Below, in pieces: positions 1,049 through 45,900 of a stretch of 64,000 nucleotides of DNA. This DNA is from Ostrea edulis (lineage: Eukaryota), in contig NC_079172.1 in the NCBI RefSeq assembly GCF_947568905.1, positions 70,556,001-70,620,000 on the forward strand, read 5' to 3'. How positions within the stretch are numbered: the first letter of the stretch is position 1; each line of letters begins with the position of its first letter. The notes below the pieces were generated by a model. That model ran no database searches. It was not told the origin of the DNA and worked only from the letters and a program-made list of their open reading frames with translations. The translations under genes were made by a program, and so were the position numbers.

Positions 1049-1455
1049 TAAAATGAAGTAAAATTCTAGATATTGTTGCTTTTTGAGGAATTTAACAGTC
1101 CTGAATGTTCAGGAGAACGTGATTTTTAATAAGTCATGTTTCTTTACTTCCCGAAAATGAAGCCAAGCCATGAACTAGATACCCTAGACCCCTGATTCGG
1201 GGGCCCAATTGTTCATTGTGGACTTTCCATATAGTTTGGACAATGAGATTCAGTTTTGATAGAAGCCTGCCTTTACAGTGTTAATTTTTCAGTTTAGTTT
1301 CAATGTATTTGGTGTCCTGGACATTAAAAGGTGCATTTTAAAGAACCAATGCATTGTAACTAAACTTGTATGAACCACCCAGTTCCACCCCAAATCCAGA
1401 ACTCTGGCCAAGGGATAATGAATTCCACAATAAAGGTAGCTGCTTATTCATAATG

Positions 1456-3120
1456 CACACAGTTGGTTTCCTTAATACACAGTTTGTAAACTGGATACAC
1501 AGTTTATTTTTTGGATACACAGTTTGTTTGTTGGATACACTGTTTGTTTGTTGGATACACAGTTTGCTGGATACACAGTTTGTTTGTTGCATACACAGTT
1601 TGTTTGTTGGATACACAGTTTGTTTACTGGATACACAGTTTGTTTCCTGGATACACAGTTTGTTTGCTGGATACACAGTTTTTGGATACACAGTTTGTTT
1701 GTTGGATACACTGTTTGTTTGTTGGATACACTTTGTTTGTTGGATACACTGTTTGTTTGTTGGATACACAGTTTGTTTGCTGGATACATAGTTTGTTTGT
1801 TGGATACACAGTTTGTTTGCTGGATACACAGTTTGTTGGATGCACAGTTTGTTGGATACACTGTTTGTTTACTGGATACACAGTTTGTTGGATACACAGT
1901 TTGTTTGTTGGATACATTGTTTTTGGATACACAGTTTGCTAGATACACAGTATGTTGCATACACAGTTTCTTGGATACACTGCTTGTTGGATGCACAGTT
2001 TGTTTGTTGGATGCACAGTTTGTTTGTTGGATACACAGTTTGTTGGATACACAGTTCGTTGGATACACTGTTTGTTGGATACACTGTTTGTTTGTTGGAT
2101 ACACTGTGTGTTTGCTGGATACACAGTGTGTTTGCTGGATACACAGTTTGTTTGTAGGATACACAGTTTGCTGGATACACAGTTTCTTTGTTGGATACAC
2201 AGTTTGTTTGCTGGATACACAGTTTTTGGATACACAGTTTGCTGGATACACAGTTTGTAAACTGGATACACAGTTTATTTTTTAGATACACAGTTTGTTT
2301 GTTGGATACACAGTTTGTTTGCTGGATACACAGTTTTTGGATACACAGTTTGTTTGTTGGATACACTGTTTGTTTGTTGGATACACAGTTTGTTTGTTAA
2401 ATACACAGTTTGTTTGTTGGATACACTGTTTGTTTGTTGGATACACAGTTTGTTTACTGGATACACAGTTTGTTTGCTGGATACACAGTTTGTTTGTTGG
2501 ATACACAGTTTGTTTGCTGGATACACAGTTTGTTTGTTGGATGCAGTTTGTTGGATACACTGTTTGTTTACTGGATACACAGTTTGTTTGTTGGATACAG
2601 TTTGTTTCTTGGATACACTGGTTTTGGATACACAGTTTGCTGGATACACAGTTTGTTTGTTGCACACACAGTTTCTTGGATACACTGTTGTTGGATGCAC
2701 AGTTTGTTTGTTGGATACACAGTTTGTTTGTTGGATACACAGTTTGTTGGATACACAGTTTGTTGGATACACAGTTTGTTAAATACACAGTTTGTTTGTT
2801 GAATACACAGTTTGCTAGCCGGATACACAGTTTGCTTGCCGGATACACAGTATTTGGATACACAATTTGTTGGATACAGTTTGTTTGTTGGATACACAGT
2901 TTGTTGGATACACTGTGTGTTTGTTGGATACACTGTGTGTTTGCTGGATACACAGTTTGTTTGCTGAATACACAATTTTTGTGCTGGATACACTTTTTGT
3001 TTGTTGGATACACAGTTTGTTGGATACACAATTTGTTTGCTGGATACACAGTTTGTTTGCTGAATACACATTTTGTTTGCTGAATACACATTTTGTTTGC
3101 TGGATACAGTTTGTTTGTTT
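1456..3120. repeat. Minisatellite, 15-20 bp units (consensus ATACACAGTTTGTTTGTTGG)
   Basis: About 90 units varying in the number of GTTT sub-blocks. Explains all the CIQQT/WIHS-type ORFs in the track. Confidence 0.97.
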
Positions 3121-5193: not shown

Positions 5194-7369
5194 AGTTACA
5201 TGGGTTTCTCCGAACTCTTTGTTTTCCAACGGTCAAACTGATACCATGGTAAATTTTATTTCACGTATGAGTTTTATCTCATTCTATTTTTACCTTTTTT
5301 CTCACAGAATCTGTCAAAATTCTAGATCTATCAACTACACTTTCTCTCACTGGACGACATGCTGCACTGTTTACTGTCTATGCGCATACGTCTGAAGACT
5401 GAAAGGAGGAGACTCGATATTTTTTGTATAGGCCATCAAAAAGTATTAATTTTTACGTTAAAACGATAATTTTTAACTTTAGATAAGTGTTATTTTCGCA
5501 AAGTTCATACTTTCAACAATACAACAAAAATTGAGAAAGCGCTAGGAAAATTGTCATTTCATGATTTTTGCGCAAAATGAGCTGTAGTGTCTCTTTTCGA
5601 AAATTATTTTCGAAATTTAAAAGAAGAAGAAATATAACACAGATAATGGGGTTGTAAGAGGTATTTGAACCAAGGTATAAAATTTACGTTCGGACAACAT
5701 AAAAGATATTGTTGTTGGATAGGTTTCTCATTTTTTCTTTCTTTTTTGTTCTTCAACTGGTATGTCACAAATAAATACTACCTTGTAAAAAACCTTTGGT
5801 GATGGGCAACAAGTTTGATCAATGACACAGTTTTTATCATAGATATTTTTGATTGCCATTAAGGTAGAGACGGATAGCAACCACGTGATCAGTAAAAAGC
5901 GTGTATTTTCAGAATGTGCTACACGGGCAGATGAAAACGAATCTCACTATTCGCAACTTTAGGACTAGGTTATTGCGCATGCGCTAAATATTGACAACGA
6001 ATCAAGCTCGAATTTGTTCAGTTTTTGTAAACAAAAGACCAATCGACATGTGTCACAGTATCAGTACGTATTACACACAGAAAACGATTTGCTTTATACA
6101 TACATTACAACTTACAACACTCGTAAGGTTATTGAGAATAAATTTACACCAACGCCTAATGATATGCATATAATTTCTTGATGTATTACGGACACACATA
6201 ATGTTTATATATGGATAAAAACCATTAAAGATGCTAATACAAATATTTTACAACGTTTAAATAGTGATAGGGAGGTTCGGTGCAGTGCCAAGGGGGGCAC
6301 TACCCCCCCCCCCCTATTTCAGTTATTATGTGGTACCCGAATCTCAATACTACAGGAGTCTACATGTGTAACAAGTGTATAGAGAAAAGTGCATCACAAT
6401 GACACACTACTCGTACATACACCATTCTTTATAGAGATCTCAATAGCCTGTAAACTTTACCTACAGTTTTATACTTACCTGTTCAACAATGAGTTATTGC
6501 ACAATCACGCAGAATAAATAATAAATATTTCAATATTTTTATTTTAATATTCACCAATCAAGAGCCCTCCAGGGGGTGGGAGCATATACAATTTTAACAA
6601 TTGAACATTATAACTACATGATACAATATACACATGTATACCATATACACATGTTAGAGTTTCTACAATTGACATTAGTCTTGAATTGGCTCATCATAAT
6701 GCTGATTGAAAATGCACTGTACAAGTGTACTATATGGGTAGTAAAGTAAAACAATATTATAAAATGTTGTCATGAACACAGAGGGTACCCAGGGATGGTG
6801 CCTGTGCCAAGTCCATTAGACTGGCAGTCTTGTACCCCAAGAATTCGAGACAGCTTATTTATAGATGTATTTATGATGTCTTTATAGTGAGCCACATCTT
6901 GCATATTCTGTTTCAGTATTCTATGGATTTAAAGCAAACCTTCTGAGTAAATTTTTAAAAATTATGTTTCTTACTATTACAAGTTCTAAGATGCCATAGA
7001 ATACGATAGATTTATTTCTAATTCAGAGCCCCAACAGGGCATAAGGAGATGTTACATACATAAGGGGGGGGGGCACACCAAAAGACAGAATTGAAACAGG
7101 ACAAAAATTACATTGGACAAGAAGGAAGGAGGAGTCACTGCACTTCTTATGGTTATATTTCAAGTAAACGATTGGAGCTGATCTTCAAGCTAAATAACAC
7201 ACAAACATACACACCTATACATAAAGGTGTATACACACACATCTAAATATTAAAAATCATTAATACACCAACATTGTTTGCAAGTAATTAAGTAATTAGC
7301 CATAGGGTTTAAAACATCTAATCTATATGCAGTAGAAAACTCCATACTTACTTACTCCGACATGTAAAC

Positions 7370-7757
7370 ATAATGGAGCCTGAACCCAAAAGTCATAAAT
7401 TTCACAACTATAGCATATGACTCATTATAATAATGCAAACAGTTTGCCTCCTTGCTCTCTAGAAGTGAAAAAGGTTTTCGGTGATAAAACATATTTTCAA
7501 TATATGACCAATTTAGCTCCACTCTGGGTCCTAAACCCAGAGTTTATAAATTTCACAGTTTATTTTAATCTTGCCCAAGGGAGGTAGGGTCAATGAAATT
7601 CACATTTTTTGTTCCCCTTAACCCATAGATACTTTATACCAAATTTTGTTAGAACTGGTTCAGCTGTTCAAAAGAAGCTTCAAATGTTCCATTGTTTATA
7701 ACTGACTGATAAAAACAGATAGCAATAGGTCTCCTGAATGATTGAGGTGACCTAAAA
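7370..7757. repeat. Helentron-associated interspersed repeat fragment with terminal hairpin
   Basis: Ends in the degenerate palindrome AGGTCTCCTGAATGATTGAGGTGACCT plus an A-run (7727-7759). A similar end occurs at 42572-42600. Family assignment is from recall of oyster repeats. Confidence 0.4.
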
Positions 7758-8004
7758 AATTTAAAGTCCCTTAACTCCGCAACGACGAAGGCAGAAAGAC
7801 AGTATTGATGGATGGACGTGCAGACAGAATGATTACTCTAGGGCACCTGCCATATGATGGGGACCTATAAATTACTTTGATTTTTATACCGATAAATATG
7901 CATGAAAATAAATAGTTTATGTTATATAATATTATTTAAAGAAGTCATTTCTGCCAAATGTATTCTCCTTGATGTATTTTCTACTGAAGATGTGTAACCT
8001 TTAA

Positions 8005-8469
8005 GGGGAGTGATTTATTACTTTCTCCAAAATTTTGTTTCTCACTTTCAATGATCAAAATCTACTGTCTATGTGTTTAAAAGATTTTACTTAGAAATTA
8101 AAGTTTAATACATTATAAAAGAAGATCATTTTAGAGAGTCTATTATTTTATTTTTTTTTGTAAAAAAGTTGGTGGTATGTTGCTGTTAACAGTTTATGAA
8201 ATTTTCAAAAGAAATGGATATAGATACAAGTTTATTATATCTTTCACATTTTAAGCATTCTTACAAAATTAATAATTCATAGGTTTGTTTGTATTCATTA
8301 AAAGACTCAAGTCTTTGTTTACATAACACATATCTAAGGCTAAAATATTTCTTTTATTCTTGCATTCAGAAGGTCAAAATTTTGGATGTCAACATTAAAT
8401 GAGTTATGTTTTTAATGGTTAACATCAAAAATGAAAAATATTTCATTCAACAATCGTGAACCCGTCCCT
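8005..8469. mobile_element. TTAA-flanked Kolobok-like insertion inside the MULE
   Basis: TTAA at 8001-8004 and 8470-8473; weak TIR similarity (GGGGAG.. / ..CCCGTCCCT). Removing it restores a continuous minus-strand open frame (see findings). Confidence 0.5.
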
Positions 8470-8884
8470 TTAACCCTGTCCATGCTGACTGGTATGCAAT
8501 GATAACAACTGTTTATTAAATCTGTATAATCAATACATGTTTTAAGTCTTCTCATAACATCCATTAATCTTGAGAAAATATAAACTCTTTTATTTCACAA
8601 AAACCAACAAATTTCCTTGCAGGAGTTGATGCATCAATTTGGTACACACATCGTCTTTTCGGGTACTTTACCCCTGTAAAGGAAATTTGATAATGTTAAT
8701 TTTGTGTACAAATTTCATTTTTACAAATTCATAGTTCATCATAACAATAAAAGTAAATCTGCAAATAGTGTAAAATCCAAGTGGCATGGTAGAGCTAATC
8801 TTTATGAGAACTTCATTGGCAAAAATAAATTTAATTACATTTTAATAAGGTGTTTTAAGTAAATTAGCTTTTCAAGTTGTTTAA

Positions 8885-9157
8885 GGTAGCTCACTACACT
8901 AAAGCTTATACTCTGTATGACACCACGTCACAAGATGACAATTTAAATGTTTTGTGAAATTATTTGTATCGATCTATTTGTTTGTCTATCATTGTAGCTC
9001 AGTGGTTAAAGCATTAGGCTAGTGAACGCAGATCTTGAGTTCAAATCCCCCAGTCTTTTATTCATGTGAAATTTTTTTTTTTGAAAATCATGTTTTTATC
9101 CAAATTTGTATATTTTTTGCCTCTTTGGAATATATACTTATTGTATAGTGAGTCATC
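8885..9157. mobile_element. Kolobok-like MITE carrying a tRNA-derived segment
   Basis: TTAA at 8881-8884 and 9158-9161. TIR GGTAGCTCACTACA versus the reverse complement GATGACTCACTATA (10/14). A-box-like TAGCTCAGTGG and B-box-like GAGTTCAAATCCC within 8994-9051. Confidence 0.6.
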
Positions 9158-10773
9158 TTAAATAGCTATTGTTGGCCTACAGAAATGACCAACTCTGCAA
9201 TGTATACAAGTTATGTTATAAAATCTTGTGGTTTTCTACTGTCTATCATAATTGAGAAGTGAGTCTGTATGAAAATCACAATGTTATACATCCCTACCAA
9301 GTTTCCTGGTAAATGAATCTGATGACTATGTATGTCAGTTTGTCTCCCTGGGCCTCATCAGTCAGAGAAGAGATCAAACTGAGACACCAAAATTGTCAAG
9401 GAAATTCCCTGATACCTTCCTGGTTTCAAATATACATTTTCACTACATGTATGTTTTTACAAGTTTTATTTTTACATATTCTCAAAATTCACATATTTAA
9501 ACATTAAAATATTGAGCTTTATTCAAGAAACCAGGAAAGTTTCGGCCCATTTTGAAATGGAATTCTGCAGCAATGAAACAAATCACATTAAAACGATTGT
9601 ATCCTCTCATAAATCCTTTAGTTTAAGTTAGTATTATGGGCCTATAGTCTAGTCAATCTGTCAAAATTTAAGCCAAACCTCAAACTAATTGGTACAAAGC
9701 TAATTACCACTAAAAATAAGGTATTTATGTCATGTGTACAAGTAACATTAAAACAATACAAAATTATAACTTGAGGAAAATTCAATTTTGGGGCAAATAT
9801 TGGGTTTACATTGAGAAATCGTGGAAATGTGAAATTTTTTAAATACAGTAATTATATCATATCAATTGGTATCAGATTATTTAAAACTCAAATTACAGGA
9901 TTGGATATGGACAATTATTATAAAATCTTTTGTATATTTTTTATATGTTGTTGAGACTATATTCTAGTATAACTTAAAGCAATAAAAGCTTTTGTAGCCA
10001 TTAGTTTGAGGTCATCCTGTACATTGACTAGACTACTATTTAAAAATTGTTAATCAAAATGTAAGAAGAAAAGGAGGAAAATTTTATTTGCAAAATTTCG
10101 CTTGCATTAATTCACCTGCACAAACATTCCGCTATATAAGCACATCTGCCACTGTGAGTCTATAAGTGGACTGTTGAGATTATCTAATATTACACATTTT
10201 ATCCTCCAATATAAACATAACTTGTAACGTAATATTAGTATGCAAGTAAAAGTTGTTAATGATAGAATATTAATAATCAAGAAATGATCTGTCTTGTCTG
10301 TCTAATCATGAATTCATTGACTATCCTGCAACAAAACACTGGCCTAGAGCTGCCAGCTAAGCTCATCTACCATTGTCAGTCTACTACTGGACTGACTTAA
10401 TGCCTGTTACAGTTGTCAATCGGTTAAAAATTGAAATTGAATAGCACATACTGCTAGAGTGGTCTTGAAATTCTTTGAAGCAATAAAACTTTACATTAAT
10501 AGACAGGCAGTACACAAATACCTAGAATAAAACAAACTGAAACAAAATAATTAACTGGAACAAATACATGTATATATTACCTAGCCTTACAAACTATTAG
10601 ATGAAAACTGAACATGATTTAAGCACACAAGATATTTTCCATATGCCCTTCCCCACTGTCTATGGTCTGTCAAAGTCTAAAAGTATGGTTGACACTATCC
10701 ATACTTGCATTATGTATGACATTAAAAGGAATACACATACATGTATATCTGATGATAAAAAGGAATGACAATC

Positions 10774-13101
10774 TTATTTATCATCATCTTTAGTACCATT
10801 ATTGTTTTGTCCACCTGTAAATATAACATCTTGTTTTCTTCCATCACTTTGTATAATTGTTACCCTTCTACCATATAGTGAAGGAGGAATTCTATACCAA
10901 GAGGGTAGGCCTTGAGGTTCAGTAGGATTGATAACTGGACCCTGTGGTTGCAATGGAAGGACCGGTGGCTCAGTGGGAGGAACAAGTCTTAAGGGAGGAT
11001 ATGGTGCTACAGATGGCCCCATTCTCTGACTTTCTTGTGATTCAGCAACCCGATTTTTACCTGACCTTTGACCTTGTTCTATACCTTGATTTATGCTTTG
11101 AAGAAGCACCTTCTCTTTCTCTTGCTGGGATGGCTTTCTTAAAGGATTTCTTCTCTTCTTCCCAGGATTTTTAGCAGTGGACCTAAAGCGTGGCTGTAAT
11201 ACATTATTGGCATTGGAAGATATTTTCTCAGTCCTCTTAAACCCTTTTAAGGAGTTTGGGAGGTTTTCACACCCGTCATTGGCAGAAATTATGTGATCCA
11301 ATGCTGTGACAATATTATCCAGTCTATATTCCTGAACACGAGGACTATTCTTTATCTGAGACATTATTTTGTTCAGTTTTTCTTGAATACCTTGAATCTT
11401 TGATGAAGTCGAAGTGTCACAAATATTTCTTTTCTTAACTGGTGGACTGATAACCTTGTCAGTAATATTTTCATTATGAATGTTAGTCTGATCCTCTAAT
11501 GTACAGCTACCAGTATTACGATAAAGTAAGGACTGAACCTTGTGTAGATGTTTACAAATATTCCCTTCCAAATAGTCATAACAGTTGCAAGTAAGGAGAT
11601 GTCTACACAGATCTATACAGGGTACTTTTTTACATTTCATGTAACAATGTGTTTCAGGACATTTCTGACAATGCGTCACTACTGTATATAAATTTTTCTG
11701 TGATTTAAGGGTGAATGTGTTTTCATTAACCTGACAGACTGAGGAATTTTGAATCTCAAAACTACTCTGATGTCGATCCAAAGTCTTCATAATTTCCCCT
11801 GAAGGAATATTGAACTTTTTAGCAGCCAAATGTTTGAAATACAAATTATTTTCAATCTGTAGCAGGGTTTCCAGCAGAATGTCTATTCTACGATTTCTTT
11901 TTCCTTCAAAGTAAATTGTTTTTAATTGATTGTGAAAGCTTTCCAAAAACATATTTGTATTAACATTGGAATATTCACCTTTCCTGAAACACATTGCCCA
12001 CTTCTCTTTTCTCAACAAGTAATAATTATTGAAGTATGTCAGTAAATTTGGATTAATGTCAGACAATCTTTGAACCAGAATATCACAATATGTATTCAAT
12101 AATGTTTCAGTCTTAGCATCCATTGCAGCACATAATAAACAATAAATTTCGGCTTGCTGCTCTGTGTCTTTAACATGCTGCTGAATTTTTAATCGCCAGT
12201 TTTTGTGTACATGCCAAATACATAGGAAATGTTCTAAGTTTGATCCATATACATTCTTTGCTGCATTCCAACCAGCATTGTCATCATCTGTCATTAAAAT
12301 ATTTACTTTTGTTTGTGGAGATTTGCTTTTAACAGCATTTAAAAAAACAGAAATAGCTTGTTCATTTTCTTTATTGGAAATACAAAATGCAACAGGATAA
12401 CCACATCTAAATTCATCTGGAACTAGAAGGGTTATCAACTTAAATGAATATAAGTTTGTTTTGTGGGTGGAATCCATGCAAAGAATTATGGGTGCATATT
12501 TTTCATACATGTCTAGCTGTTGTTTCGTCATTATTGCCAACATAAAGTCTTCCTTAGCCAGTCCAATCTTGCTGTCATCTACATTTTGTTGTTTAAAAAT
12601 CAGAATGGGATCAAATATTTCTTTCCTTAAAGCATCTACTCGAAGAAATGTTGATGTTGCATCATCACTGTGTCTAATAACAGATGAGTCAATAATCTTT
12701 TGCTTTAGATTGTGTATTGTCTTTCTGTCAATCAAATGATAATGTTTCAGGTCTGTCAAGTCATCTCGATTGTTTCTGTCACTAAATTTGTCTCTAACTT
12801 TGTCTAAAATTGTATTTATAGGAATTTTTAATGCTAACATAGTTTTTATGTCTGACTTCAAATGATCTGGAATAGGTAAAAATTTACTATCTTCAAAAGT
12901 TGTTGAGTGTGTGTGTGATTGTATGTATTTTGCTTTAACTGTTCCATCCTTCTCTACCAAAACTGAAAATCTTGATAAGCATAAACCATCTAATTTACAT
13001 GAACCCTTTTTTTTTCTCCCTCCTCTTTCTATCTTTTGTATCACATGCAATTCGCTTTTTCCCATCCCTATGACAAACCAGTGTGTATCTCTCAGAACCA
13101 T
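10774..13101 (-). CDS. MULE (Mutator) DDE transposase with C-terminal SWIM zinc finger
   Basis: CMDSTH (D1), LMTDDD (D2), CIWH (CxxH), FLESFHNQLK (E), SWIM CNCYDYLEGNICKH. The genuine coding frame probably begins near the A9 run at 13007-13015; the annotated Met-proximal residues are likely out of frame. Confidence 0.93.
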   Translation of the reverse strand: MVLRDTHWFVIGMGKSELHVIQKIERGGRKKKGSCKLDGLCLSRFSVLVEKDGTVKAKYIQSHTHSTTFEDSKFLPIPDHLKSDIKTMLALKIPINTILDKVRDKFSDRNNRDDLTDLKHYHLIDRKTIHNLKQKIIDSSVIRHSDDATSTFLRVDALRKEIFDPILIFKQQNVDDSKIGLAKEDFMLAIMTKQQLDMYEKYAPIILCMDSTHKTNLYSFKLITLLVPDEFRCGYPVAFCISNKENEQAISVFLNAVKSKSPQTKVNILMTDDDNAGWNAAKNVYGSNLEHFLCIWHVHKNWRLKIQQHVKDTEQQAEIYCLLCAAMDAKTETLLNTYCDILVQRLSDINPNLLTYFNNYYLLRKEKWAMCFRKGEYSNVNTNMFLESFHNQLKTIYFEGKRNRRIDILLETLLQIENNLYFKHLAAKKFNIPSGEIMKTLDRHQSSFEIQNSSVCQVNENTFTLKSQKNLYTVVTHCQKCPETHCYMKCKKVPCIDLCRHLLTCNCYDYLEGNICKHLHKVQSLLYRNTGSCTLEDQTNIHNENITDKVISPPVKKRNICDTSTSSKIQGIQEKLNKIMSQIKNSPRVQEYRLDNIVTALDHIISANDGCENLPNSLKGFKRTEKISSNANNVLQPRFRSTAKNPGKKRRNPLRKPSQQEKEKVLLQSINQGIEQGQRSGKNRVAESQESQRMGPSVAPYPPLRLVPPTEPPVLPLQPQGPVINPTEPQGLPSWYRIPPSLYGRRVTIIQSDGRKQDVIFTGGQNNNGTKDDDK

Positions 13102-13492
13102 CCTTGTTTACAGTTTTTGGTCTATGCAAAACATATCTTGTGTTTTTGTTTATAAACTCTTCTGTCAAATATTTCTCAAAAGAATCAAGATTTTCAAAGT
13201 TCAAATCTTCCACCCTAATGTCTGCATCATGATTATTTATCAAATGACTCACAAGAATTTCAACATGATAAAAATCTAAGTCGCATGATGGAACAATACA
13301 TGGCATTCTTTTACCATTTTCTTTCTCATGTACAGATTTCTTGTGCCTATTCAAATTTGCTTTATCATGGAAAATTTTCATGCAAACTGAACACTGATTT
13401 TTCTGATAGATACCATGTTCTACATTTGTAACTTGATCATATGAATGTATTGTCTGTATGTAGTCTGTAGATTTTGTGGATTTTCTAGTATA
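12995..13492 (-). CDS. Two C2H2 zinc fingers plus MULE N-terminal region (shifted frame)
   Basis: Frame is open upstream of the annotated Met. It gives CSVCMKIFHDKANLNRHKKSVH and CIVPSCDLDFYHVEILVSHLINNH, then YTLVCHRDG..KRREKKK, which continues as KKKGSCKLDGLC in the transposase frame. Confidence 0.85.
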   Translation of the reverse strand, partial: YTRKSTKSTDYIQTIHSYDQVTNVEHGIYQKNQCSVCMKIFHDKANLNRHKKSVHEKENGKRMPCIVPSCDLDFYHVEILVSHLINNHDADIRVEDLNFENLDSFEKYLTEEFINKNTRYVLHRPKTVNKDGSERYTLVCHRDGKKRIACDTKDRKRREKKKGFM

Positions 13493-14166
13493 TCAATTGT
13501 CTCTCGTCTGTTTGTAGTCTTCAATGAGTTCAATGTATCCAAGTTAAATTTCCTACATGCAGAATGATCAAAATTCCAGCAATAATTACTTTTGAATGCT
13601 AATGATACTGGTTCTCTCTGATTGTCTGGTGGTGATGTTTCAGTCACTGTTTCATAATGTCCACCCCCTGCCCTTGTCCAAATCAAATGAATTCTAGAAT
13701 TTGAATTTCCAAAGTCATGTTCAAGCGTCACAACTTCTGGATTATCCTGATCACCACCAACAGTTACTAATAAGTTGATTCCAAAATGCCTAGACATTGC
13801 CAAAATTGATTCCTGCCCTGCAAAAGTGCCTAACTGCCTAAGATTATTCAGTTCTTGTTGAATTTCTGGATAAGTCATTTGGTTACCATTAGAATGATAG
13901 AAAAACATATGAAAAATATCCAAATTTTGTTCAATTTCATGTATTGCTGCATTTCGTAGCTCTTGGTGATGATTTTGGTTTCCATAGAGGGCAAGACTAA
14001 CAGACCTAAAGAGACAATTCCCATCCCCTACTATTGGTTGTCTGTGAAGTCCATATAATGTCAAATATTCATCCTGACGGGTACGTTCAAGTTCAGAATC
14101 ATCTAACATTTGTAAATGGACCTCATTATTTATGACTCTATCAATTACCGAGTCAGTCTCTGAAAT
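13420..14166 (-). CDS. OTU-family cysteine protease (deubiquitinase-like) domain
   Basis: GDGNCLFRS catalytic Asp/Cys motif and GGGHYE His motif. Acceptor tacatttttgtAG (14167-14168) opens the frame in phase 0 (ISETDSVID...MLDDSE). Confidence 0.88.
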   Translation of the reverse strand: MSETDSVIDRVINNEVHLQMLDDSELERTRQDEYLTLYGLHRQPIVGDGNCLFRSVSLALYGNQNHHQELRNAAIHEIEQNLDIFHMFFYHSNGNQMTYPEIQQELNNLRQLGTFAGQESILAMSRHFGINLLVTVGGDQDNPEVVTLEHDFGNSNSRIHLIWTRAGGGHYETVTETSPPDNQREPVSLAFKSNYCWNFDHSACRKFNLDTLNSLKTTNRRETIDILENPQNLQTTYRQYIHMIKLQM

Positions 14167-14747
14167 CTACAAAAATGTAGTATTCATGTTAAAGACCATG
14201 CATTAATATTAGACAATAGACTGACACTAGCGTAAAATCTATTGTGTTAGAAATCTAACAAATTTGTGTAAATTAGCAGTATCCACCACAGTTAATGAAC
14301 ATTGGAATGACTAATGGTCACGGCCATTTATTCAATGCTGATAATATAATGTTCAATATTTCTTCTTAATACTCCTTTTTTGTGTAGACCTTTCATCCCC
14401 TTTATGTACTTTTATTTTAATATGGTAAGTTTGGTTTTCAACTTGGCTTCTTGATTTTGGAGAGGAAGTAGAAATTCAAAAAGCAGTCAATGATAAATGA
14501 TTTTCATAAGTCTTCAGCTCAGGCTAATCTGACATTCCTCTAACTCTTACTTGTAGTTTTATATATATATATAAACAAGTGATAGATCCAGTCATGTATA
14601 TATAAAAGTGGAAGTAAATGGTCAGAGGAATCTCAGATTAAATAATGCAGGCTAAGAAATGATGACTGTAAATATATGTGATACAAATTTCTTATTCAAC
14701 AACTTACTTGAAACCATGGCTCAGATGTAGGATTTACTTATACTTAC

Positions 14748-15253
14748 ATCAGTTGAATCCAAAGAAAACTGTTGAGGGTAGGCATCCACTGTTCTCTACA
14801 ATAAGCATGATAAGACTATAATAAATTTAAATTTTTCCACTTGCATATCTTTGACAGAATACTCCTAATGTAAATATATTCAATGGAAATTGAAACTAGA
14901 TGTCTTGCACACACATATGGGTATTCATATAATACAGTTTACTCCTGAAGAAATCAGTTGAGTATATATTCTATCAGCTTTGTGATATTTCTTAGTATAT
15001 ATATAACTTACTGGTATCTCAGGAAGCAACTCCAATAACGGAATATCTCCAGTCATCTAAATTAAAAATTATGAACCACAGTGACAAAAGAATGTAATAC
15101 ATGTACACATGTACATTTGTAATACCATATTCAAACATACATAAAGATAAAATACAGACATGAAAATACATATATTGTTAAAATTGTATGTACATGTATA
15201 TGCCCCTCGAGGGCCCTTGATTGGTGACGAAACAAATTAAAAAAAAAATACAC

Positions 15254-15297
<44 letters not shown>

Positions 15298-16356
15298 TAC
15301 TCTTTGTAATAGGCCAGCATTTTGAATTCTAACTGGTATCATTGAAAAAATCAAAATCTGTAATTTTTGTGTGGAGTGGCTTGTTGTACATGTATGTGCG
15401 TACATATACTTGTATACAAACTGTATTTCAGCCAACCAACTCCAGCATTCTAATTTTAAAGTTACATCCATATTGTATATATTCTTACAGGAACTGAGAA
15501 CTGGTCACTGCCATCTTTCATCCCAAAGACTATAGTAAAGAGCACTACAACCTACAAAAAATAGACACATTCATGAACTAACTGAGATATCTTTCTATAA
15601 GATTCAACAAAATAAATGATCAGTGTTCCATCATTTTTTAAAGTAATTTATGACAATAGACAACTTTAAGCTAATTTAGACTAAATTAGATTGGATTTCT
15701 TAGTGTAATGGCATAGCTAAAAAGTTGCGTAATAATTTTTAACATGTATAAAATTTAAATACTAAGTTGAACTACATAACCACAATACTATTCTAACATT
15801 AGAGTTCATAACAATACTGTTATATGAATTTTCAAGATGAGAGACCTCCTTTCGTGTTGTGAACTGTCCACTAAGCCTATCCTGTGTGCATTGAAGCATT
15901 CCATTATTTTCATGATCATCACTGACTCATTAATAAAGTTATATAACTTAGATAAATTACAGTTGGGTTGCATGGAAATGCATATATATATAAATGCTAA
16001 TACACACGTATGTTTATGCGATGAATGCAATACATATATTGAGTACTTGTAATAAAGCATCTGAATAAATTACATGGAAATTAAATTATTCTGACACATT
16101 TAACCTATTAATACCACCAATTTATGTTTTGAACTAACCGGCTTATAAAATTCCAGTATTCATTAAAACCATTCTTATGCTTGTTCTATGAAACAACATT
16201 TAAAAGCAGTGTTTTACGTAACATGTGTTGTAGAATATCCATCACTAAAGGGACGTTCATGATCCGTTTGTTCAAAAATGCACTTTCAGTGAAAAAAACA
16301 CCAGTAACTAAAAGATAAACATTACTTACGAAAAACACTGTCAAACTTTGCGCCAT
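14748..16356 (-). CDS. Candidate 5' coding exons of the MULE gene
   Basis: caacATGG exon 16356-16330 (MAQSLTVFF|gtaagt); 15551-15489 (63 nt); 15056-15012 (45 nt); 14795-14748 (48 nt). All are phase 0-0, stop-free, with good AG/GTAAG sites. Confidence 0.5.
15260..15294. repeat. (GA)n microsatellite
   Basis: Direct observation. Confidence 0.95.
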
Positions 16357-18535
16357 GTTGGATGCAGAAGGTGAAGGTCAGAAATAGCGCATGCGCAATA
16401 GCCTAGTCCTAAAGTTGCGAATAGTGAGATTCGTTTTCATCTGCCCGTGCAAACTTCCACCAGAGTTCGTTTGCTCACATTCGTAGGCACTGTGACGTAA
16501 TGAGGCCTCGACGAGGAGTTTGCTGCCCGTGTAGCCTTAGTACGTAAGTCCTCGAGCTCGCGCTTCATACTTCACCGCATATGCAGTAGGCTGTGACGTC
16601 ATAGCTACTGCCCGTGTAGCACATTCGTATTTTCACGTGAAATTATTTTTCGGAATTCCGCACACCGTCATAGAGTAGTTGAAAAACAAAAAGGGGTTCC
16701 GAAAGTACAAGTTGTTGCTGTGACTGACTCGATGATTGAGAGGGTCGTCTCGACGAAAGATAGAGAAATTTGGCCATAGTTTAGATTAGGAATACGTCAA
16801 CGTAATAATAGTGGACCAAATGTTTCGTCCGTGAAGAATGGCACTTTTTACCTCACGAAATTCACCACCATGCATAGCTACACTACGTAAACAAAGTTGT
16901 TGATGTAGCGTGATCGTGATGTCCGAGTGCTGCAAGTTTCAATACTGTTTATGTAGTCATTGAGAGTTTAAACAAAGTTTCTTCTGAGAAGAGGAATTCG
17001 ATGGATGCATTCAACGTGGACAACGAAATCATTATTTCGTTTGGTAAGTGAAAAAAATGGCAAATTAAATTTGTATTCAACCCGCTTTTCCTCTGCTATT
17101 TCACAACGCGATTTTATAATAACATCTGTAAGCGCACAACTTGGAGCTGTTTCATTTTTTGTGCATTTATGTATTCCATATGTGCCCAAAATATAACTCC
17201 TACATGCACATGTAATTGTAAAGGGATGTCATGTATGTGCCAGATTTAAAAAAAATAGGGCTCCCACAAGTTTGAGGGGGGGGGGGGGGGGTTGAGTGTT
17301 GCACTAAAATTCTATTTGGTATATATGATAGTACTTATAGCATCTTGAAATTTCATTGACCTAAGAGATATTTCAAATCTGGGGTTTCATGTTTCACACA
17401 AGCATGTAGGTCTACAAAACTTTATTTAAAATATTTGTAAAATCACAAGCCCCCCTCATAGGCAAATATATTTATTGTATGAAAATAAGATATGTACAAA
17501 ATGTATGTCCTTCTCTTGACCCACACTCGGTAAAGGAGACCGGTGTGATAAATCTAGAGTTGTCTTGTTTTGATATTATCAGAATGAACTGGCAGTTTAT
17601 GAAAACATATCTGTCATCTCATATTGCAATATGATATTGTGATGTTTATTCACCTCATTGAGGACCCGGGGGTGGGGGTGGGGGTGTATGTACAACAATA
17701 TGAAATAAATAACAATCATGCAGATGTACTACAACTGCATGAGTTCACATTGCTGCAGCACTGCACACATTTAACCTAGTGTTACATATGTAATACTGAT
17801 TTCAGACAAGATTTTAAAAATTAACATAATGAAATACATGTTGTATGTAATTTTCAATATATCAGCATTTTATAGTTCACTGAACATGCATTGAGCAGCT
17901 GTTGAGACACACAATTTTGAAAATTGACATTGTCTAACACAGTATAATTAATTCTGACTGTGCAAATATTAATTATGATTTTTTTTTCTAAGCATCATCC
18001 TAAGGACCAGTGCAAGTTGAAATGGGCTCCGAGCCAACAACTTCAACAGCAATTTGCCATGAAAATCAGCAAGAAAGGTACACTATTTTCTAAGGTAGAA
18101 TTTTTCATATTATCACCAGACATTTATAAAGACAATTTTTAGTATATTAGATATTCATCTTTTTTTTTCAATATTTGAAAATACAGAATATATTTTAACA
18201 GGTACTTCATTTACATTGATGATGTCATACCCCCTGGACACCACAACTTTACAGGTTACAGAGAAAATTCAAGAACTTCTGCAAAATGTGGGATTTGGAT
18301 AGAATCAATTAATGTATTTGTGATCCCAGAGCAATGGATATATTGTGCAACATACTAAAGTGTGAATTTAATGGAAAACAAGTACATGTACTCATGTATT
18401 ACATGTCTTTCTTAAAGACAATAATATTGCATAAATATAGAGGAAGTGTCATTGTTGATTATTCTAAGTTTTTGATATATCAAAATCAGTAAACAATTCT
18501 AAATGAAAATAAAATACCAATTTCATAACTTTAAT

Positions 18536-26819: not shown

Positions 26820-28478
26820 ATGTCCAGACGGGACATAAAGTTTGCCCAGCATTATGTGGAGTGTACACAGTGTGAGGCGAACGCTGAATATTACTGTAAC
26901 ACCTGTACCGACAACCTGTGTCAGGTATGCCGGGACCGTCACACCAAGAGCAAAGCCACCAGATCCCACGTCATCGTCCCCTACCAGGAGAGGCCGACGA
27001 CATCTCCAAACACCGAATCCTGTCACATCCATCCAGAATTCTCTTATGACATGGTGTATCAGGAATGCAAGCTTCCGGTCTGCTTTAGATGTATGAAAGA
27101 AAATCATAAAGATCACACATTTAGAAACATTGAGGGCATATTGAAAGACACCGAGAAACCCTGCAGAGACAAGATTCAAAACGCGAAGAAGAATATACTC
27201 CCAAAGTTGCGTGACCGCTTAAAGAAATTATCTGACCAGAGAACAAAGTCCAAGGAGAAAAGAACCGACATAAAGAGACGACTGCGAGAAGATGCAAAAC
27301 AGATTAAGGATTTAGTAGACACCATTCTCCAGGAGAAACTCGGAGATCTTGATATCAGCGACAAATCCCTGGATGAGGAATTCGAAAATCAAACAGCCAT
27401 TATATCTCGTTTTATATCCAACTATGAAGATTTCATCGACGGGTTTGAAGATGAAGAAAAACGACCGTACGAGAAGCTAGCGCTGCGAAATGAAATACTC
27501 CAGTCTGAAGTTACAGAGCCTGAATTACCAAGCCTAGAAAATCCTCAGTACCAACCAGAAATCATCAACAAGGACGGGGTCATGAAGCTGTTTGGAAAAT
27601 TAAGTTTGCCAAAGAGACCTACATATGAAAAACCAAAACAACAAATTTCAAAAACATTAAGCATATCAAAAAATATTTCTATTGGTTCTCCTGTAAAATG
27701 TCTGGAATTCAATGTGCCCTCTACAGGTTTAAATCAGATTTCCTATTTATCTGTAGACAAAGTTTGGGTTGGAGATAACAAAGGCCAGATCTTGCTCATG
27801 GAGAGGACTGGAAATAAACTGGACGAGATTAAAACAGATTCGTCCTCTATGTGGGGTTATCACGCTGTAACTTACGATGGTGATCTGCTGTATATCGACA
27901 AATCAAACAACAGCATCAAGAAATACACATCAGACAGGAAGACCACAACTGTAGTCATAAACACGGGAAACTGGTCGCCTCTCTGTGTGTACTCCTCCCA
28001 CAGGACCGGCGACATACTGGTGGGGATGACGTTTGGTGCCGGGAGAGTGGTCCGATACAACAAGGAGGGTCGTGAGCTGTGGCAGGGTCAGTACGACGCC
28101 CAGGGTCAGCCTCTTTATAGATTTCCTAGATATATAACAGAAAACGTGAACGGCGACATCTGCACGTCAGACGGTATCCTCAATAAAAGCGTGGTGGTGG
28201 TGGTGGACAGGGACGGAAATCACCGGTTCTCCTACAGAGGGCGTCAGGACGGATCAGAATTCAATCTTAGGGGAATCTGTACCGACGTCCAGGGGCGGAT
28301 CCTAGTGGTAGTCAATGGTGACAGCGTCCACGTGATTGATCAGAACGGAGAGTTTATCACCGTCCTACTGACCAGTGATCACGGAATATCTTGTAATTAC
28401 GAACTGTGTACAGACAGTGACAATAATATCTGGCTTTGTGGAAACAGTACAGTCAAAATGTACAAGTACTTGAATTAG
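26820..28478 (+). CDS. RING-less TRIM-like protein: two B-boxes, coiled coil, NHL-type beta-propeller (552 aa)
   Basis: B-box1 CTQC..CNTC..LCQVCRDRH..H; B-box2 CHIH..YQEC..VCFRC..HKDH; helical K/E-rich region; propeller motifs (PLCVYSSHRTGDILVG, PRYITENVNGDICTSD, GICTDVQGRILV). Acceptor ctacAG immediately before the ATG; candidate upstream UTR donor G|GTATGT at 26411. Confidence 0.92.
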   Translation: MSRRDIKFAQHYVECTQCEANAEYYCNTCTDNLCQVCRDRHTKSKATRSHVIVPYQERPTTSPNTESCHIHPEFSYDMVYQECKLPVCFRCMKENHKDHTFRNIEGILKDTEKPCRDKIQNAKKNILPKLRDRLKKLSDQRTKSKEKRTDIKRRLREDAKQIKDLVDTILQEKLGDLDISDKSLDEEFENQTAIISRFISNYEDFIDGFEDEEKRPYEKLALRNEILQSEVTEPELPSLENPQYQPEIINKDGVMKLFGKLSLPKRPTYEKPKQQISKTLSISKNISIGSPVKCLEFNVPSTGLNQISYLSVDKVWVGDNKGQILLMERTGNKLDEIKTDSSSMWGYHAVTYDGDLLYIDKSNNSIKKYTSDRKTTTVVINTGNWSPLCVYSSHRTGDILVGMTFGAGRVVRYNKEGRELWQGQYDAQGQPLYRFPRYITENVNGDICTSDGILNKSVVVVVDRDGNHRFSYRGRQDGSEFNLRGICTDVQGRILVVVNGDSVHVIDQNGEFITVLLTSDHGISCNYELCTDSDNNIWLCGNSTVKMYKYLN

Positions 28479-42920: not shown

Positions 42921-45900
42921 ATGAGTCGTAAACAAGGTACGTCATGCTTTGTTTCTCTCTACAGTGTTAATCTCTCGAAAAAAAATATTTCGCCCATTTT
43001 TCTTTAATACCAGCGTAAGGTTTTTGTCAATGTTTATCTACTGTTTTTTTTACTTCCTGGTGAAATATATTTTGTTAAAGGCATTGATCCGCTGTATCAA
43101 TTGATCTGTTAGACCTTAAAATTCAGCCATTCTTGTCGGCCGGGTGCCAAATTGTGTGTGTTTCTACGTGTGTGTATATAATATGATTTGAAAAGAGTAC
43201 AGTATGTGATGGAATGAATATTTCCAATCAAAAAAGTAAAGGACCAAAAGACTCGAATAGAAAGTTAATATACATTTTATGATATTACTGCCTGAAGAAG
43301 TATACGTAGTAGCAAAATGTTATTGGAGTTTTGTGTTTCGTGACTTATCTATATCCAATGTTTTTGCCTTTCTTACTTCTACAAATTGTAAGGATAGTAA
43401 TTTCTTCATTCTTTTTATTTACATGTTATGATTCAACAAGGCTCGTGCCCTGTGTTTGTTTACGTGGGTTAAATAAACTAGTAAAAGTTCGATAGGTTCG
43501 ATAAGCATCGTGGTGCTCATTATTCTGTAATGTGGTTAAATGGTCAAATTCAGAATAAATTTGGTAAATATGTCACAAACGTAGTCCCTTTCTGGCATTC
43601 TAATTCTTATTTTAACATTGTTATTGACTTTTAGCAATGACAGATACACTTATTTTAACATATGGATATTGACTTCTAGCAATGACAGATACACTTATTT
43701 TAACATATTGTTATTGACTTTTAGCAATGACAGATACACTTATTTTAACATTGTTATTGACTTCTAGCAATGACAGATACACTTATTTTAACTTTGTTAT
43801 TGACTTTTAGTAATGACAGATACACTTATTTTAACATTGACTTCTAGCAATGACAGATACACTTATTTTAACATATCGGTATTGACTTCTAGCAATGACA
43901 GATACACTTATTTTAACTTTGTTATTGACTTTTAGTAATGACAGATACACTTATTTTAACGTTGTTATTGACTTTTAGTAATGACAGATACACTTATTTT
44001 AACATTGTTATTGACTTTTAGTAATGACAGATACACTTATTTTAACATATCGATATTGACTTTTAGTAATGACAGATACACTTATTTTAACATTGTTATT
44101 GACTTTTAGTAATGACAGATACACTTATTTTAACATTGACTTTTAGTAATGACAGATACACTTATTTTAACATATTGATATTGACTTTTAGCAATGACAG
44201 ATACACTTATTTTAACATATTGATATTGACTTCTAGCAATGACAGATACACTTATTTTAACATTGTTATTGACTTTTAGTAATGACAGATACACTTATTT
44301 TAACATTGTTATTGACTTTTAGTAATGACAGATACACTTATTTTAACATTGTTATTGACTTTTAGTAATGACAGATACACTTATTTTAACATATGAATAT
44401 TGACTTCTAGCAATGACAAATACACTTATTTTAACATTGTTATTGACTTCTAGCAATGACAGATACACTTATTTTAACATTGTTATTGACTTATAGTAAT
44501 GACAGATACACTTATTTTAACATTGACTTTTAGCAATGACAGATACACTTATTTTAACATTGTTATTAACTTCTAGCAATGACAGATACACTTATTTTAA
44601 CATATTGATATTGACTTTTTAGTAATGACAGATACACTTATTTTAACATATGAATATTTACTTTTAGTAATGACAGATACACTTATTTTAACATTGTTAT
44701 TGACTTTTAGTAATGATAGATACACTTATTTTAACATTGACTTTTAGCAATGACAAATACACTTATTTTAACATATGAATATTGACTTTTAGTAATGACA
44801 GATACACTTATTTTAACATTGTTATTGACTTTTAGTAATGACAGATACACTTAATTTAACATTGACTTTTAGCAATGACAAATACACTTATTTTAACATA
44901 TGAATATTGACTTTTAGTAATGAGAGATACACTTATTTTAACATTGTTATTGACTTTTAGCAATGACAGATACACTTATTTTAACATTGACTTTTAGTAA
45001 TGACAGATACACTTATTTTAACATTGTTATTGACTTTTAGTAATGACAAATACACTTATTTTAACATTGTTATTGACTTTTAGTAATGACAGATACACTT
45101 ATTTTAACATTGTTATTGACTTTTAGTAATGACAGATACACTTATTTTAACATTGTTATTGACTTTTAGTAATGACAGATACACTTATTTTAACATATTG
45201 ATATTGACTTCTAGCAATGACAGATACACTTATTTTAACATATCGGTATTGACTTCTAGCAATGACAGATACACTTATTTTAACTTTGTTATTGACTTTT
45301 AGTAATGACAGATACACTTATTTTAACGTTGTTATTGACTTTTAGCAATGACAGATACACTTATTTTAACATTGACTTTTAGCAATGACAAATACACTTA
45401 TTTTAACATTGACTTCTAGCAATGACAAATACACTTATTTTAACATATTGATATTGACTTTTTAGTAATGACAGATACACTTATTTTAACATTGTTATTG
45501 ACTTTTAGTAATGACAGATACACTTATTTTAACATTGTTATTGACTTTTAGTAATGACAGATACACTTATTTTAACATTGTTATTGACTTTTAGTAATGA
45601 CAGATACACTTCTTTTAACATTGTTATTGACTTTTAGTAATGACAGATACACTTATTTTAACATTGTTATTGACTTCTAGCAATGACAGATACACTTATT
45701 TTAACATTGACTTTTAGCAATGACAGATACACTTATTTTAACATTGACTTTTAGCAATGACAAATACACTTATTTTAACATTGACTTCTAGCAATGACAA
45801 ATACACTTATTTTAACATATTGATATTGACTTTTTAGTAATGACAGATACACTTATTTTAACATTGTTATTGACTTTTAGTAATGACAGATACACTTATT

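What the first reader, a model, noticed from the sequence alone, without database searches (positions are those of the whole stretch)
10774..14166. OTU deubiquitinase-C2H2-MULE-SWIM polyprotein with two compensating frame breaks
The OTU ORF and the transposase ORF are in the same frame, while the C2H2 segment between them is shifted by one base. Deleting one A from the A9 run (13007-13015) gives KRREKKKGSCKL and fuses fingers to transposase. The upstream break (13420-13492) can be fixed by one extra base or by a short intron (for example CCA|GTATCA 13608 to an AG at 13403/13394, or 13589 to 13465). The result is an about 1100-aa transposase carrying its own OTU protease with an intact Asp/Cys/His set. 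Established: some MULEs carry Ulp1-type SUMO proteases, and OTU domains occur in viruses and some other transposons. Inferred: this family uses a deubiquitinase to protect its transposase or edit chromatin ubiquitin. I cannot tell whether this architecture is already catalogued.
Basis: partly seen in the sequence, partly recalled or inferred. Interest (0 to 1): 0.8.

Follow-up and report, generated by a model that had tools for sequence, protein, structure and literature searches.

The report
Broken oyster Mutator transposon carrying a deubiquitinase
This is one damaged copy of a young 10.5-kb jumping gene of the flat oyster whose single 1113-residue enzyme starts with a ubiquitin-removing (OTU) protease domain; the design is real and kept by selection, but the two frame breaks are ordinary disabling mutations.

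Summary
On the minus strand, an OTU ORF (14109-13420), a two-finger C2H2 segment (frame shifted by one) and a MULE/SWIM transposase ORF (13101-10774) lie in a row.

They are collinear with an intact single-ORF 1113-aa protein, Ostrea edulis LOC125651055 (97% identical). A DNA alignment to that paralog (99% identical) shows what the breaks are: a 7-bp deletion at 13477/13478 and one extra A (A8 to A9, 13007-13015). No intron is needed, and "compensating" is only arithmetic, because stops fill the stretch between the breaks.

The gene sits in a 10.5-kb Mutator-like element (5936-16433) with about 50-bp terminal inverted repeats (TIRs). The paralog has a perfect 9-bp target site duplication (TSD).

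The OTU domain is closest to human OTUD1. Its Asp/Cys/His triad is invariant in 18 family members, and its dN/dS (0.06-0.21) is as low as that of the transposase core.

OTU+MULE proteins are already in databases as "uncharacterized" for Ostrea, Saccostrea and Crassostrea. I found no paper describing this N-terminal OTU-MULE design. The nearest published cases are Ulp1-bearing MULEs, Medicago MULEs with a C-terminal OTU-superfamily protease, and OTU-bearing Ginger1 and Helitron elements.

What the OTU domain does is untested. The scan had already noted this stretch as a Mutator element (s1-307030), and OTU-bearing hAT and integrase-type transposons elsewhere in this genome.

The parts
5936..16433 (-). 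Whole Mutator-like element copy, 10,498 bp
   Evidence: It matches L001 3679-14251 at 99.1% and 97.7% identity, and homology stops exactly at the GAATCTC... ends.
5936..5986 (.). Terminal inverted repeat on the 3' side of the gene
   Evidence: It is the reverse complement of 16385-16433 with one mismatch.
16385..16433 (.). Terminal inverted repeat on the 5' side of the gene
5919..5935 (.). 17-bp flank CACGGGCAGATGAAAAC, repeated inverted at 16434-16450. This copy has no 9-bp TSD.
   Evidence: Unexplained.
16434..16450 (.). Inverted copy of the 17-bp flank. A high-copy repeat begins at 16451.
   Evidence: Read depth is about 290 against about 15 inside the element.
14110..14166 (-). In-frame leader upstream of the Met, after an acceptor-like ...tag/ATTTCAG site. 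A possible junction to an unidentified 5' exon.
   Evidence: The peptide SVIDRVINNEVHLQ is conserved with Saccostrea P0003 and with L003 and L004. L004 has no ATG at the Met position.
13420..14109 (-). OTU ORF. Residues 1-211 are native and 212-229 are a frameshifted tail ending in a stop.
13645..14085 (-). OTU cysteine-protease domain (aa 9-155). D29 is at 14025-14023, C32 at 14016-14014 and H151 at 13659-13657.
   Evidence: Pfam E 1.6e-11. OTUD1 4BOP by sequence E 2.4e-19. AlphaFold2 model pLDDT 89 and Foldseek 4BOP E 1.5e-14. The triad is invariant in 18 sequences.
13477..13478 (-). Break 1: 7 bp missing relative to the intact paralog
   Evidence: Reads carrying the 7 bp: 10 of 18 and 17 of 26.
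13328..13393 (-). C2H2 finger 1 (CSVC...H...H)
   Evidence: Pattern match, conserved across the family. A helix is present in the model.
13229..13300 (-). C2H2 finger 2 (CIVPSC...H...H)
   Evidence: C38, C43, H56 and H61 are invariant in alignment A4.
12904..13198 (-). WRKY-GCM1/FAR1-like DNA-binding domain with a basic insert. It has a C-x5-C-x21-H-x-H zinc signature and is split by break 2.
   Evidence: Invariant ligands. FAR1 PF03101 is sub-threshold in relative P0021. Foldseek gives only a weak match to WRKY18 (prob 0.99, E 0.02).
13007..13015 (-). Break 2: A9 run. Intact copies have A8.
   Evidence: Reads with one A fewer: 10 of 14 and 8 of 19.
10774..13101 (-). Transposase ORF. The native frame runs from the A-run down to the stop at 10776-10774.
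12199..12486 (-). MULE DDE core. The D, D and E motifs are CMDSTH (12480-12463), MTDDD (12294-12280) and LESFH (11946-11932).
   Evidence: Pfam. Motif positions. The same motifs are visible in distant members.
11548..11589 (-). SWIM-type CxCx9CxH zinc motif
   Evidence: Pattern only, conserved. No Pfam SWIM hit.
10987..11013 (-). Conserved C-terminal motif SVAPYPPLR, function unknown
   Evidence: Present in P0001-P0006 and P0020, and degenerate in P0021.

Best explanation
Window 5936-16433 is one copy of a recently active autonomous Mutator-like (MULE) cut-and-paste DNA transposon family of the flat oyster. Its single long ORF encodes a 1113-aa transposase. The domain order is: N-terminal OTUD1-like OTU cysteine protease, two C2H2 fingers, a WRKY-GCM1/FAR1-type DNA-binding domain, the MULE DDE (RNase H-like) catalytic core, a SWIM zinc motif, and a conserved tail. 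In this copy the ORF is disabled by a 7-bp deletion in the OTU-finger linker and by one extra A inside the DNA-binding domain. It can therefore make at most an OTU-only 229-aa product and depends on intact copies for movement; its TIRs are intact. Shown here: the architecture, the nature of the breaks, the element ends, the TSD in the paralog, the multi-copy state, and purifying selection on the OTU domain. Inferred: the OTU domain is an active deubiquitinase that serves transposition. It could keep the transposase from ubiquitin-dependent degradation, or remove ubiquitin marks from chromatin or repair factors at the break. A less likely role is cleavage of the polyprotein in cis.
For: An intact 1113-aa O. 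edulis protein carries OTU+MULE+ZSWIM1-3 Pfam domains and is 97% identical. Relatives occur in Saccostrea, Crassostrea and many unnamed contigs. It is collinear with all three window pieces. Its gene is one uninterrupted ORF, L001 6001-9342. The element-wide alignment shows 77 substitutions and 20 indels over 10.5 kb; two of the indels are in the ORF, -7 bp and +1 A. The TIRs are about 50 bp, and L001 has a 9-bp TSD, GAAAAGAAG. Raw WGS reads of two runs show both forms at both sites. Depth is about 13-20 where about 1.4 is expected for a single copy. Joints of internal-deletion derivatives run from 10816 or 10785 to 13546. The OTU domain matches OTUD1 4BOP by sequence at E 2.4e-19. The model has pLDDT 89 and a Foldseek TM-score of 0.76-0.87. 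D29, C32 and H151 are invariant in 18 members down to about 25% identity. OTU dN/dS is 0.06-0.21, against 0.06-0.12 for the MULE core. In a quick tree, OTU carriers cluster: 7 label changes against 11.8 in shuffles, 0 of 500 shuffles as low.
Against: No RNA run holds the stretch, so neither expression nor a fused transcript is shown. This copy has no TSD; its flanks form a 17-bp inverted repeat. Short reads cannot be assigned to this locus, so the A9 could still be an assembly slip here; a 7-bp deletion is much less likely to be one. A conserved in-frame leader upstream of the Met suggests an unseen 5' exon, so 1113 aa may not be the full protein. Deubiquitinase activity and its role are untested. 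The copy-number estimate rests on my own figure of about 0.94 Gb for the genome size.
Confidence: 0.88

Rival explanations
1. The two breaks are sequencing or assembly errors, and this copy is in fact intact.
For: A homopolymer length error (A8 read as A9) is a classic assembly slip. Most reads, and the Logan contig of run X1, show the intact form at both sites.
Against: A clean 7-bp deletion is not a typical error. In two independent WGS runs, up to 8 of 18 and 9 of 26 reads lack the 7 bp, and 4 of 14 and 11 of 19 fit A9. The window's forms therefore exist in real DNA, probably in more than one copy. Some reads ending near the sites may inflate these shares.
Confidence: 0.06
2. The breaks are bypassed in expression: a short intron removes break 1, and ribosomal or transcriptional slippage on the A-run corrects break 2. 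This copy would then still make the fusion.
For: A9 runs can slip during transcription (general knowledge). The linker around break 1 is the least constrained part of the protein, with dN/dS 0.21-0.37.
Against: Intact relatives at four levels of divergence code straight through both sites with A8-equivalent lysine codons. The state here is therefore derived, not a conserved recoding signal. There are no RNA data, and DNA-read joints show nothing at the proposed sites. Break 2 sits inside a folded zinc domain, two residues before its first Cys ligand.
Confidence: 0.03
3. It is a domesticated host gene (a ZSWIM1/3- or FAR1-like derivative with an OTU domain), not a transposon.
For: The best Pfam match includes the ZSWIM1-3 RNaseH-like family. 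dN/dS is low across the protein. RefSeq annotates the copies as ordinary protein-coding loci.
Against: There are about 50-bp TIRs and a perfect 9-bp TSD in the paralog. Two copies at different loci are 99% identical over 10.5 kb, non-coding DNA included. Read depth points to about ten copies, with internal-deletion derivatives. Substitutions between the two copies look neutral: by my count about 12 of the 15 in the ORF change an amino acid. Several paralogs occur per oyster genome.
Confidence: 0.03

Closest known systems
Ulp1 (C48) protease-bearing MULEs: KI-MULEs of Arabidopsis, melon and rice, and Mutator elements of hydra and lancelet, as listed in Bao et al. 2010 (PMC2836005)
   Same: A Mutator-superfamily transposase joined to a papain-like protease of the ubiquitin/SUMO-deconjugating kind. 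A relative in the same MULE clade (P0034, 36% identical) carries Ulp1 C-terminally.
   Different: Here the protease is OTU (PF02338), not Ulp1. It is N-terminal and fused in one ORF, and the host is a bivalve.
Medicago truncatula MULE transposases with a C-terminal OTU-superfamily protease (Babu, Iyer, Balaji and Aravind 2006, PMC1702500)
   Same: A WRKY-GCM1 + MULE + SWIM transposase fused to an OTU-superfamily papain-like protease. [quoted passage not shown]
   Different: The position is C-terminal and the host is a plant. I did not compare sequences, so independent acquisition is likely but not shown.
Ginger1 DNA transposons (OTU or Ulp1 at the C-terminus) and animal Helitrons/Helentrons with OTU (PMC2836005, PMC6431247)
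   Same: Transposon-encoded OTU domains, with the same open question of what a deubiquitinase does for a transposon.
   Different: The catalytic machinery is different (integrase-like DDE, or Rep/helicase). A word-based search with this OTU domain found only this MULE family among proteins of 612-1948 aa.
Human OTUD1 catalytic domain (PDB 4BOP)
   Same: Best match by both sequence and fold: 32% identity, TM-score 0.76-0.87, same Asp/Cys/His arrangement.
   Different: OTUD1 is a cellular deubiquitinase with no transposase attached. Linkage specificity cannot be read from this similarity.
ZSWIM1/ZSWIM3 (vertebrate MULE-derived genes)
   Same: The RNase H-like core matches PF21056.
   Different: Those are immobile host genes. 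This one is a TIR-bounded, multi-copy element.

Membership tests
Mutator-like element (MULE) DNA transposon | DDE transposase with the MULE domain | tested here: met
   PF10551 at E 1.5e-12, 48 bits against a cut-off of 27.6. The D, D and E motifs are present.
Mutator-like element (MULE) DNA transposon | Terminal inverted repeats | tested here: met
   Arms of 49-51 bp with one mismatch, shared with the paralog.
Mutator-like element (MULE) DNA transposon | Target site duplication of 8-11 bp (typically 9) | tested here: inconclusive
   The paralog L001 has a perfect 9-bp GAAAAGAAG. The window copy has none; its flanks are a 17-bp inverted repeat.
Mutator-like element (MULE) DNA transposon | N-terminal WRKY-GCM1/FAR1-type zinc DNA-binding domain | tested here: inconclusive
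   A conserved C-x5-C-x21-H-x-H signature. FAR1 is sub-threshold in P0021. The model has pLDDT 70, and Foldseek gives WRKY18 at prob 0.99 but E 0.02.
Mutator-like element (MULE) DNA transposon | Several near-identical copies and deletion derivatives | tested here: met
   A 99% identical copy lies at another locus. Read depth is about ten times single copy, and internal-deletion joints are seen.
OTU deubiquitinase family (PF02338) | Sequence membership above the curated threshold | tested here: met
   45.3 bits against a cut-off of 23.3. OTUD1 at E 2.4e-19.
OTU deubiquitinase family (PF02338) | Catalytic Asp, Cys and His | tested here: met
   D29, C32 and H151 are present here and invariant in 18 members.
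OTU deubiquitinase family (PF02338) | OTU fold | tested here: met
   AlphaFold2 pLDDT 89.1. Foldseek 4BOP at E 1.5e-14, TM-score 0.76/0.86, followed by OTUD3, OTUD5, Otu2 and viral OTUs.
OTU deubiquitinase family (PF02338) | Isopeptidase activity on ubiquitin or ubiquitin-like conjugates | not testable with these tools
   Needs an enzyme assay.
Ulp1-bearing MULEs (KI-MULE type) | Peptidase C48 (Ulp1) domain | tested here: not met
   P0001 has no PF02902 hit, even at E up to 5. A relative, P0034, has it C-terminally.
Programmed frameshift / recoding site | The frame change is conserved in functional relatives | tested here: not met
   All intact relatives are in one frame through both sites.
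Domesticated MULE gene (ZSWIM1/3, FAR1/FHY3 type) | Loss of TIRs and a single-copy syntenic locus | tested here: not met
   TIRs, a TSD and multiple copies are present.

The most novel reading that the evidence does not exclude
Oyster MULEs acquired an OTUD1-like deubiquitinase once, at the N-terminus of the transposase, and the element needs its catalytic activity to transpose. It might strip ubiquitin from the transposase or from break-site chromatin. The doubly broken subfamily, which still encodes an OTU-only protein, may have been amplified and may act in trans. This would give a young, intact, experimentally tractable system for the long-open question of why unrelated DNA transposons (MULE, Ginger, Helitron, hAT) keep recruiting ubiquitin/SUMO proteases.
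Probability: 0.25. Interest if true: 0.6.

Novelty: new variant of a known kind. Interest (0 to 1): 0.36.

Why it matters
Protease-bearing DNA transposons have been known for about twenty years, but no function has been shown for their OTU or Ulp1 domains. This family has three useful properties. It has a near-pristine autonomous copy (L001) and defined 50-bp ends. Its OTU domain is under selection as strong as that on the catalytic core. Its copies are young enough (0.7% divergence) that activity assays on natural sequences are realistic. For annotation, loci such as LOC125651055 are transposase genes rather than host genes, and this window's copy is a pseudogene.

Tried and rejected
Intron at break 1: rejected, because intact copies code through the site and the defect is a 7-bp deletion.

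Recoding at the A-run: rejected as a derived state.

A ubiquitin-like C-terminal "FTGGQ" di-glycine tail as a cis substrate for the OTU domain: rejected, since it is not conserved in P0005, P0020 or P0021.

Upstream exons homologous to the Saccostrea N-terminal extension: tblastn found only the leader next to the Met.

L003 and L004 as possible mRNAs: they align collinearly with genomic DNA through the acceptor-like site, so they say nothing about splicing.

TIRs around the distant member L002: none found within 8 kb on either side.

Exact look-ups: the OTU-only product and P0003 are not on record.

Other negative or blocked steps:
- Foldseek on the finger/WRKY model gave no significant hit.
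- Rfam found nothing in the element, and there is no other ORF of 70 aa or more with a known domain.
- Six literature searches and the papers read from them gave no description of an N-terminal OTU-MULE.
Full report
WHAT IS THERE

The window is AT-rich eukaryotic DNA. On the minus strand, one search lists three ORFs in a row: 14109-13420 (229 aa), 13381-12995 (128 aa) and 13101-10774 (775 aa). The first and third share a frame, and the middle one is shifted by one base.

Pfam assigns OTU (PF02338, E 1.6e-11) to the first ORF. It assigns MULE (PF10551, 1.5e-12) and ZSWIM1-3 RNaseH-like (PF21056, 4.1e-13) to the third.

The middle piece carries two classical C2H2 patterns, at 13393-13328 and 13300-13229. 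A SWIM-type CxCx9CxH pattern lies at 11589-11548. The A9 run is at 13007-13015.

THE PIECES ARE ONE PROTEIN, AND WHAT THE BREAKS ARE

A word-based protein search with the 775-aa piece found a 1113-aa protein of Ostrea edulis (LOC125651055, P0001) that is 97% identical and carries OTU+MULE+ZSWIM1-3 domains. It also found full-length relatives in Saccostrea cucullata, S. echinata and Crassostrea virginica, and in many unnamed ENA, JGI and Logan contigs down to 34% identity. All three window pieces align collinearly to P0001.

P0001's gene is a single uninterrupted ORF, L001 6001-9342. A base-by-base alignment of the two loci shows that inside the ORF the window copy differs by 15 substitutions and two indels:
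- 7 bp are missing at 13477/13478, in the poorly conserved linker between OTU and the first finger.
- There is one extra A in the run (A8 to A9).

No intron is involved.

The breaks sum to -6, but they do not compensate in any functional sense. In the OTU frame a stop follows 18 codons after the deletion, and the next 471 nt hold many more stops.

Break 2 also lies inside a folded domain. The family alignment shows an invariant C-x5-C-x21-H-x-H zinc signature, and the lysine run sits two residues before the first Cys. The AlphaFold2 model places it in the basic insert between two strands of a WRKY-GCM1-like sheet. That model is of moderate confidence (pLDDT 70), and its Foldseek matches to C2H2 fingers and AtWRKY18 are weak.

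ARE THE BREAKS REAL?

I laid raw Illumina WGS reads of two other runs on the stretch. Both forms appear at both sites:
- The intact 7 bp is present in 10 of 18 and 17 of 26 reads.
- One A fewer appears in 10 of 14 and 8 of 19 reads.

The window's forms therefore exist in real DNA. They are seen more often than one copy among about ten would predict. The window-private SNVs at 12405 and 13155 appear in 0 of 20 reads at both sites in X21, and in 1 of 22 (12405) and 8 of 31 (13155) in X22.

This suggests, but does not prove, that both indels are shared by a small subfamily mobilised in trans. Reads that end near the sites inflate the non-intact share, and short reads cannot be assigned to a single locus.

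IT IS A TRANSPOSON, AND A YOUNG ONE

Homology to L001 extends far beyond the ORF: window 16432-5938 matches L001 3679-14251 at 99.1% and 97.7% identity. It ends exactly at inverted 49-51-bp termini, GAATCTCACTATTCGCAACTTTAGGACTAGG.... L001 has a perfect 9-bp target site duplication, GAAAAGAAG.

The two copies differ by 77 substitutions over about 10.5 kb. By my count about 12 of the 15 ORF substitutions change an amino acid, as expected for neutral decay after insertion.

Read depth inside the element is about 13-20, from 1.38 Gb of reads. With my own figure of about 0.94 Gb for the genome, that is of the order of ten copies at 90% identity or more. Joints from 10816 or 10785 to 13546 reveal internally deleted derivatives.

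The other roughly 7 kb of the element hold no ORF of 70 aa or more with a recognisable domain and no Rfam family.

THE OTU DOMAIN IS KEPT BY SELECTION

- By sequence, the closest solved structure is the human OTUD1 catalytic domain (4BOP, E 2.4e-19).
- A confident model (pLDDT 89.1) matches 4BOP best (E 1.5e-14, TM-score 0.76/0.86, 32% identity). OTUD3, OTUD5, yeast Otu2 and viral OTUs follow.
- D29, C32 and H151 are invariant in 18 family members down to about 25% identity.
- Across three intact subfamily ORFs (L001, L003, L004), dN/dS of the OTU part is 0.06-0.21. The MULE core gives 0.06-0.12 and the linker 0.21-0.37.
- In a quick tree of the transposase core, OTU carriers cluster: 7 label changes against 11.8 in shuffles, 0 of 500 as low. 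The OTU-less rows among them are all shorter proteins (453-935 aa), possibly truncated models. Two large clades (where the source names a species: spiders, a flea, a stick insect; plus the Ulp1-bearing P0034) have no OTU. That tree is unrooted and was built with a short search.

HOW IT MOST LIKELY WORKS

Inferred from the known families: the fingers and the WRKY-GCM1 domain bind the TIRs, and the DDE core carries out cut-and-paste with 9-bp duplications. The OTU domain is a cysteine isopeptidase that acts on ubiquitin or a ubiquitin-like modifier.

The two roles I consider most plausible are protecting the transposase from ubiquitin-dependent turnover, and removing ubiquitin marks at the break. 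Bao et al. (PMC2836005) proposed the DNA-repair idea for Ginger1. Babu et al. (PMC1702500) proposed polyprotein self-processing for Medicago MULEs.

I saw no conserved cleavage-like motif in the linker. A C-terminal "TGG" is not conserved. None of these roles is tested.

This copy is non-autonomous. It could give an OTU-only 229-aa product and could still be moved in trans.

COMPARISON WITH WHAT IS KNOWN

Known cases are:
- Ulp1 in MULEs of plants, hydra and lancelet.
- OTU or Ulp1 in Ginger1, and OTU in animal Helitrons (PMC2836005, PMC6431247).
- A C-terminal OTU-superfamily protease in Medicago MULEs, and animal MULEs with two classic fingers before the WRKY-GCM1 domain (PMC1702500).

A bivalve TE survey that curated 39 MULEs mentions no protease (PMC10294476). 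Six full-text searches found no description of an N-terminal OTU-MULE.

A search with the OTU region found only this family among long proteins. That search depends on shared words, so a blank is weak evidence.

I therefore rate it a new variant of a known kind. It is already sitting unnamed in RefSeq.

LIMITS

- No RNA run holds the stretch, so expression and the fused transcript remain unshown. Run X19 (organism B, 'RNA?' by guess) has contigs on ORF parts and at 15778-15843 and the flanking repeat, but cross-species conservation could explain that equally well.
- A conserved in-frame leader (14110-14166) follows an acceptor-like site, and L004 lacks an ATG at the Met position. This suggests a 5' exon that I could not find.
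- The window copy lacks a TSD, which I could not explain.

EARLIER NOTES OF THIS SCAN

- s1-307030 read the same stretch as a young 10.7-kb Mutator element. I agree, but I put the ends at 5936 and 16433.
- s1-307059 proposes 5' micro-exons. Only the leader next to the Met is supported here.
- s1-271459, s1-301993 and s1-301767 report OTU-bearing hAT and integrase-type transposons elsewhere in this genome. I did not test these. If true, OTU recruitment is recurrent in this oyster.

Noticed in passing
window 5919-5935 and 16434-16450: The 17 bp outside each TIR are reverse complements of each other (CACGGGCAGATGAAAAC), and this copy has no 9-bp TSD, although the 99% identical paralog has a perfect one. 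A normal insertion cannot produce this, because a 9-mer cannot be its own reverse complement. Unexplained.
   Followed up: partly
window 16451-16650 and 5912-5930: The right flank is a high-copy repeat: depth is about 290 against about 15 in the element, with many strand-switch joints. It carries the motif (GAATGTGCTA)CACGGGCAG three times, and the left flank has the same 19-mer.
   Followed up: partly
window 10785/10816 to 13546: Read joints in two WGS runs skip about 2.7 kb of the ORF, sometimes with filler letters. These are internally deleted, non-autonomous derivatives of the family.
   Followed up: no
window 13655-14048: Read depth over the OTU part is about twice that of the rest of the ORF, with a block of linked variants. 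Extra OTU-containing relatives at 90% identity or more appear to exist in the genome.
   Followed up: no
window 15190-15300: A short high-copy segment (depth about 145 at 15199 and 15207) lies next to an (AG)20 microsatellite (15254-15294) inside the element. There is a 40-nt inverted match between 6536-6575 and 15203-15242.
   Followed up: no
window 14110-14166; L003 and L004 5' ends: The peptide upstream of the annotated Met is conserved across subfamilies and follows a polypyrimidine-AG site. L004 has GTG, not ATG, at the Met position. The true start may lie in an unidentified 5' exon.
   Followed up: partly
window 10987-11013 (protein tail): A motif SVAPYPPLR(L/Q)V near the C-terminus is conserved down to 36% identical members (P0020). 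Its function is unknown. An H-S/A-Y motif just before finger 1 is also widely kept.
   Followed up: no
P0034 (eukprot), a relative of the transposase core: A 36% identical MULE transposase carries a C-terminal Ulp1 (PF02902) instead of an N-terminal OTU. Related MULEs therefore carry one or the other protease, as reported for Ginger1.
   Followed up: partly
window 26820-28478 (+): A 552-aa ORF with an N-terminal B-box zinc finger (PF00643, E 3.1e-07).
   Followed up: no
window 1338-3091: A cluster of overlapping ORFs of 155-269 aa in several frames on both strands. The one ORF scanned (2282-3091, minus strand) has no Pfam hit. It looks like a repetitive or low-complexity tract.
   Followed up: no
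window 44001-52000: G+C drops to 0.24-0.27 at 44-50 kb. GC skew then jumps to +0.37 at 50-52 kb.
   Followed up: no
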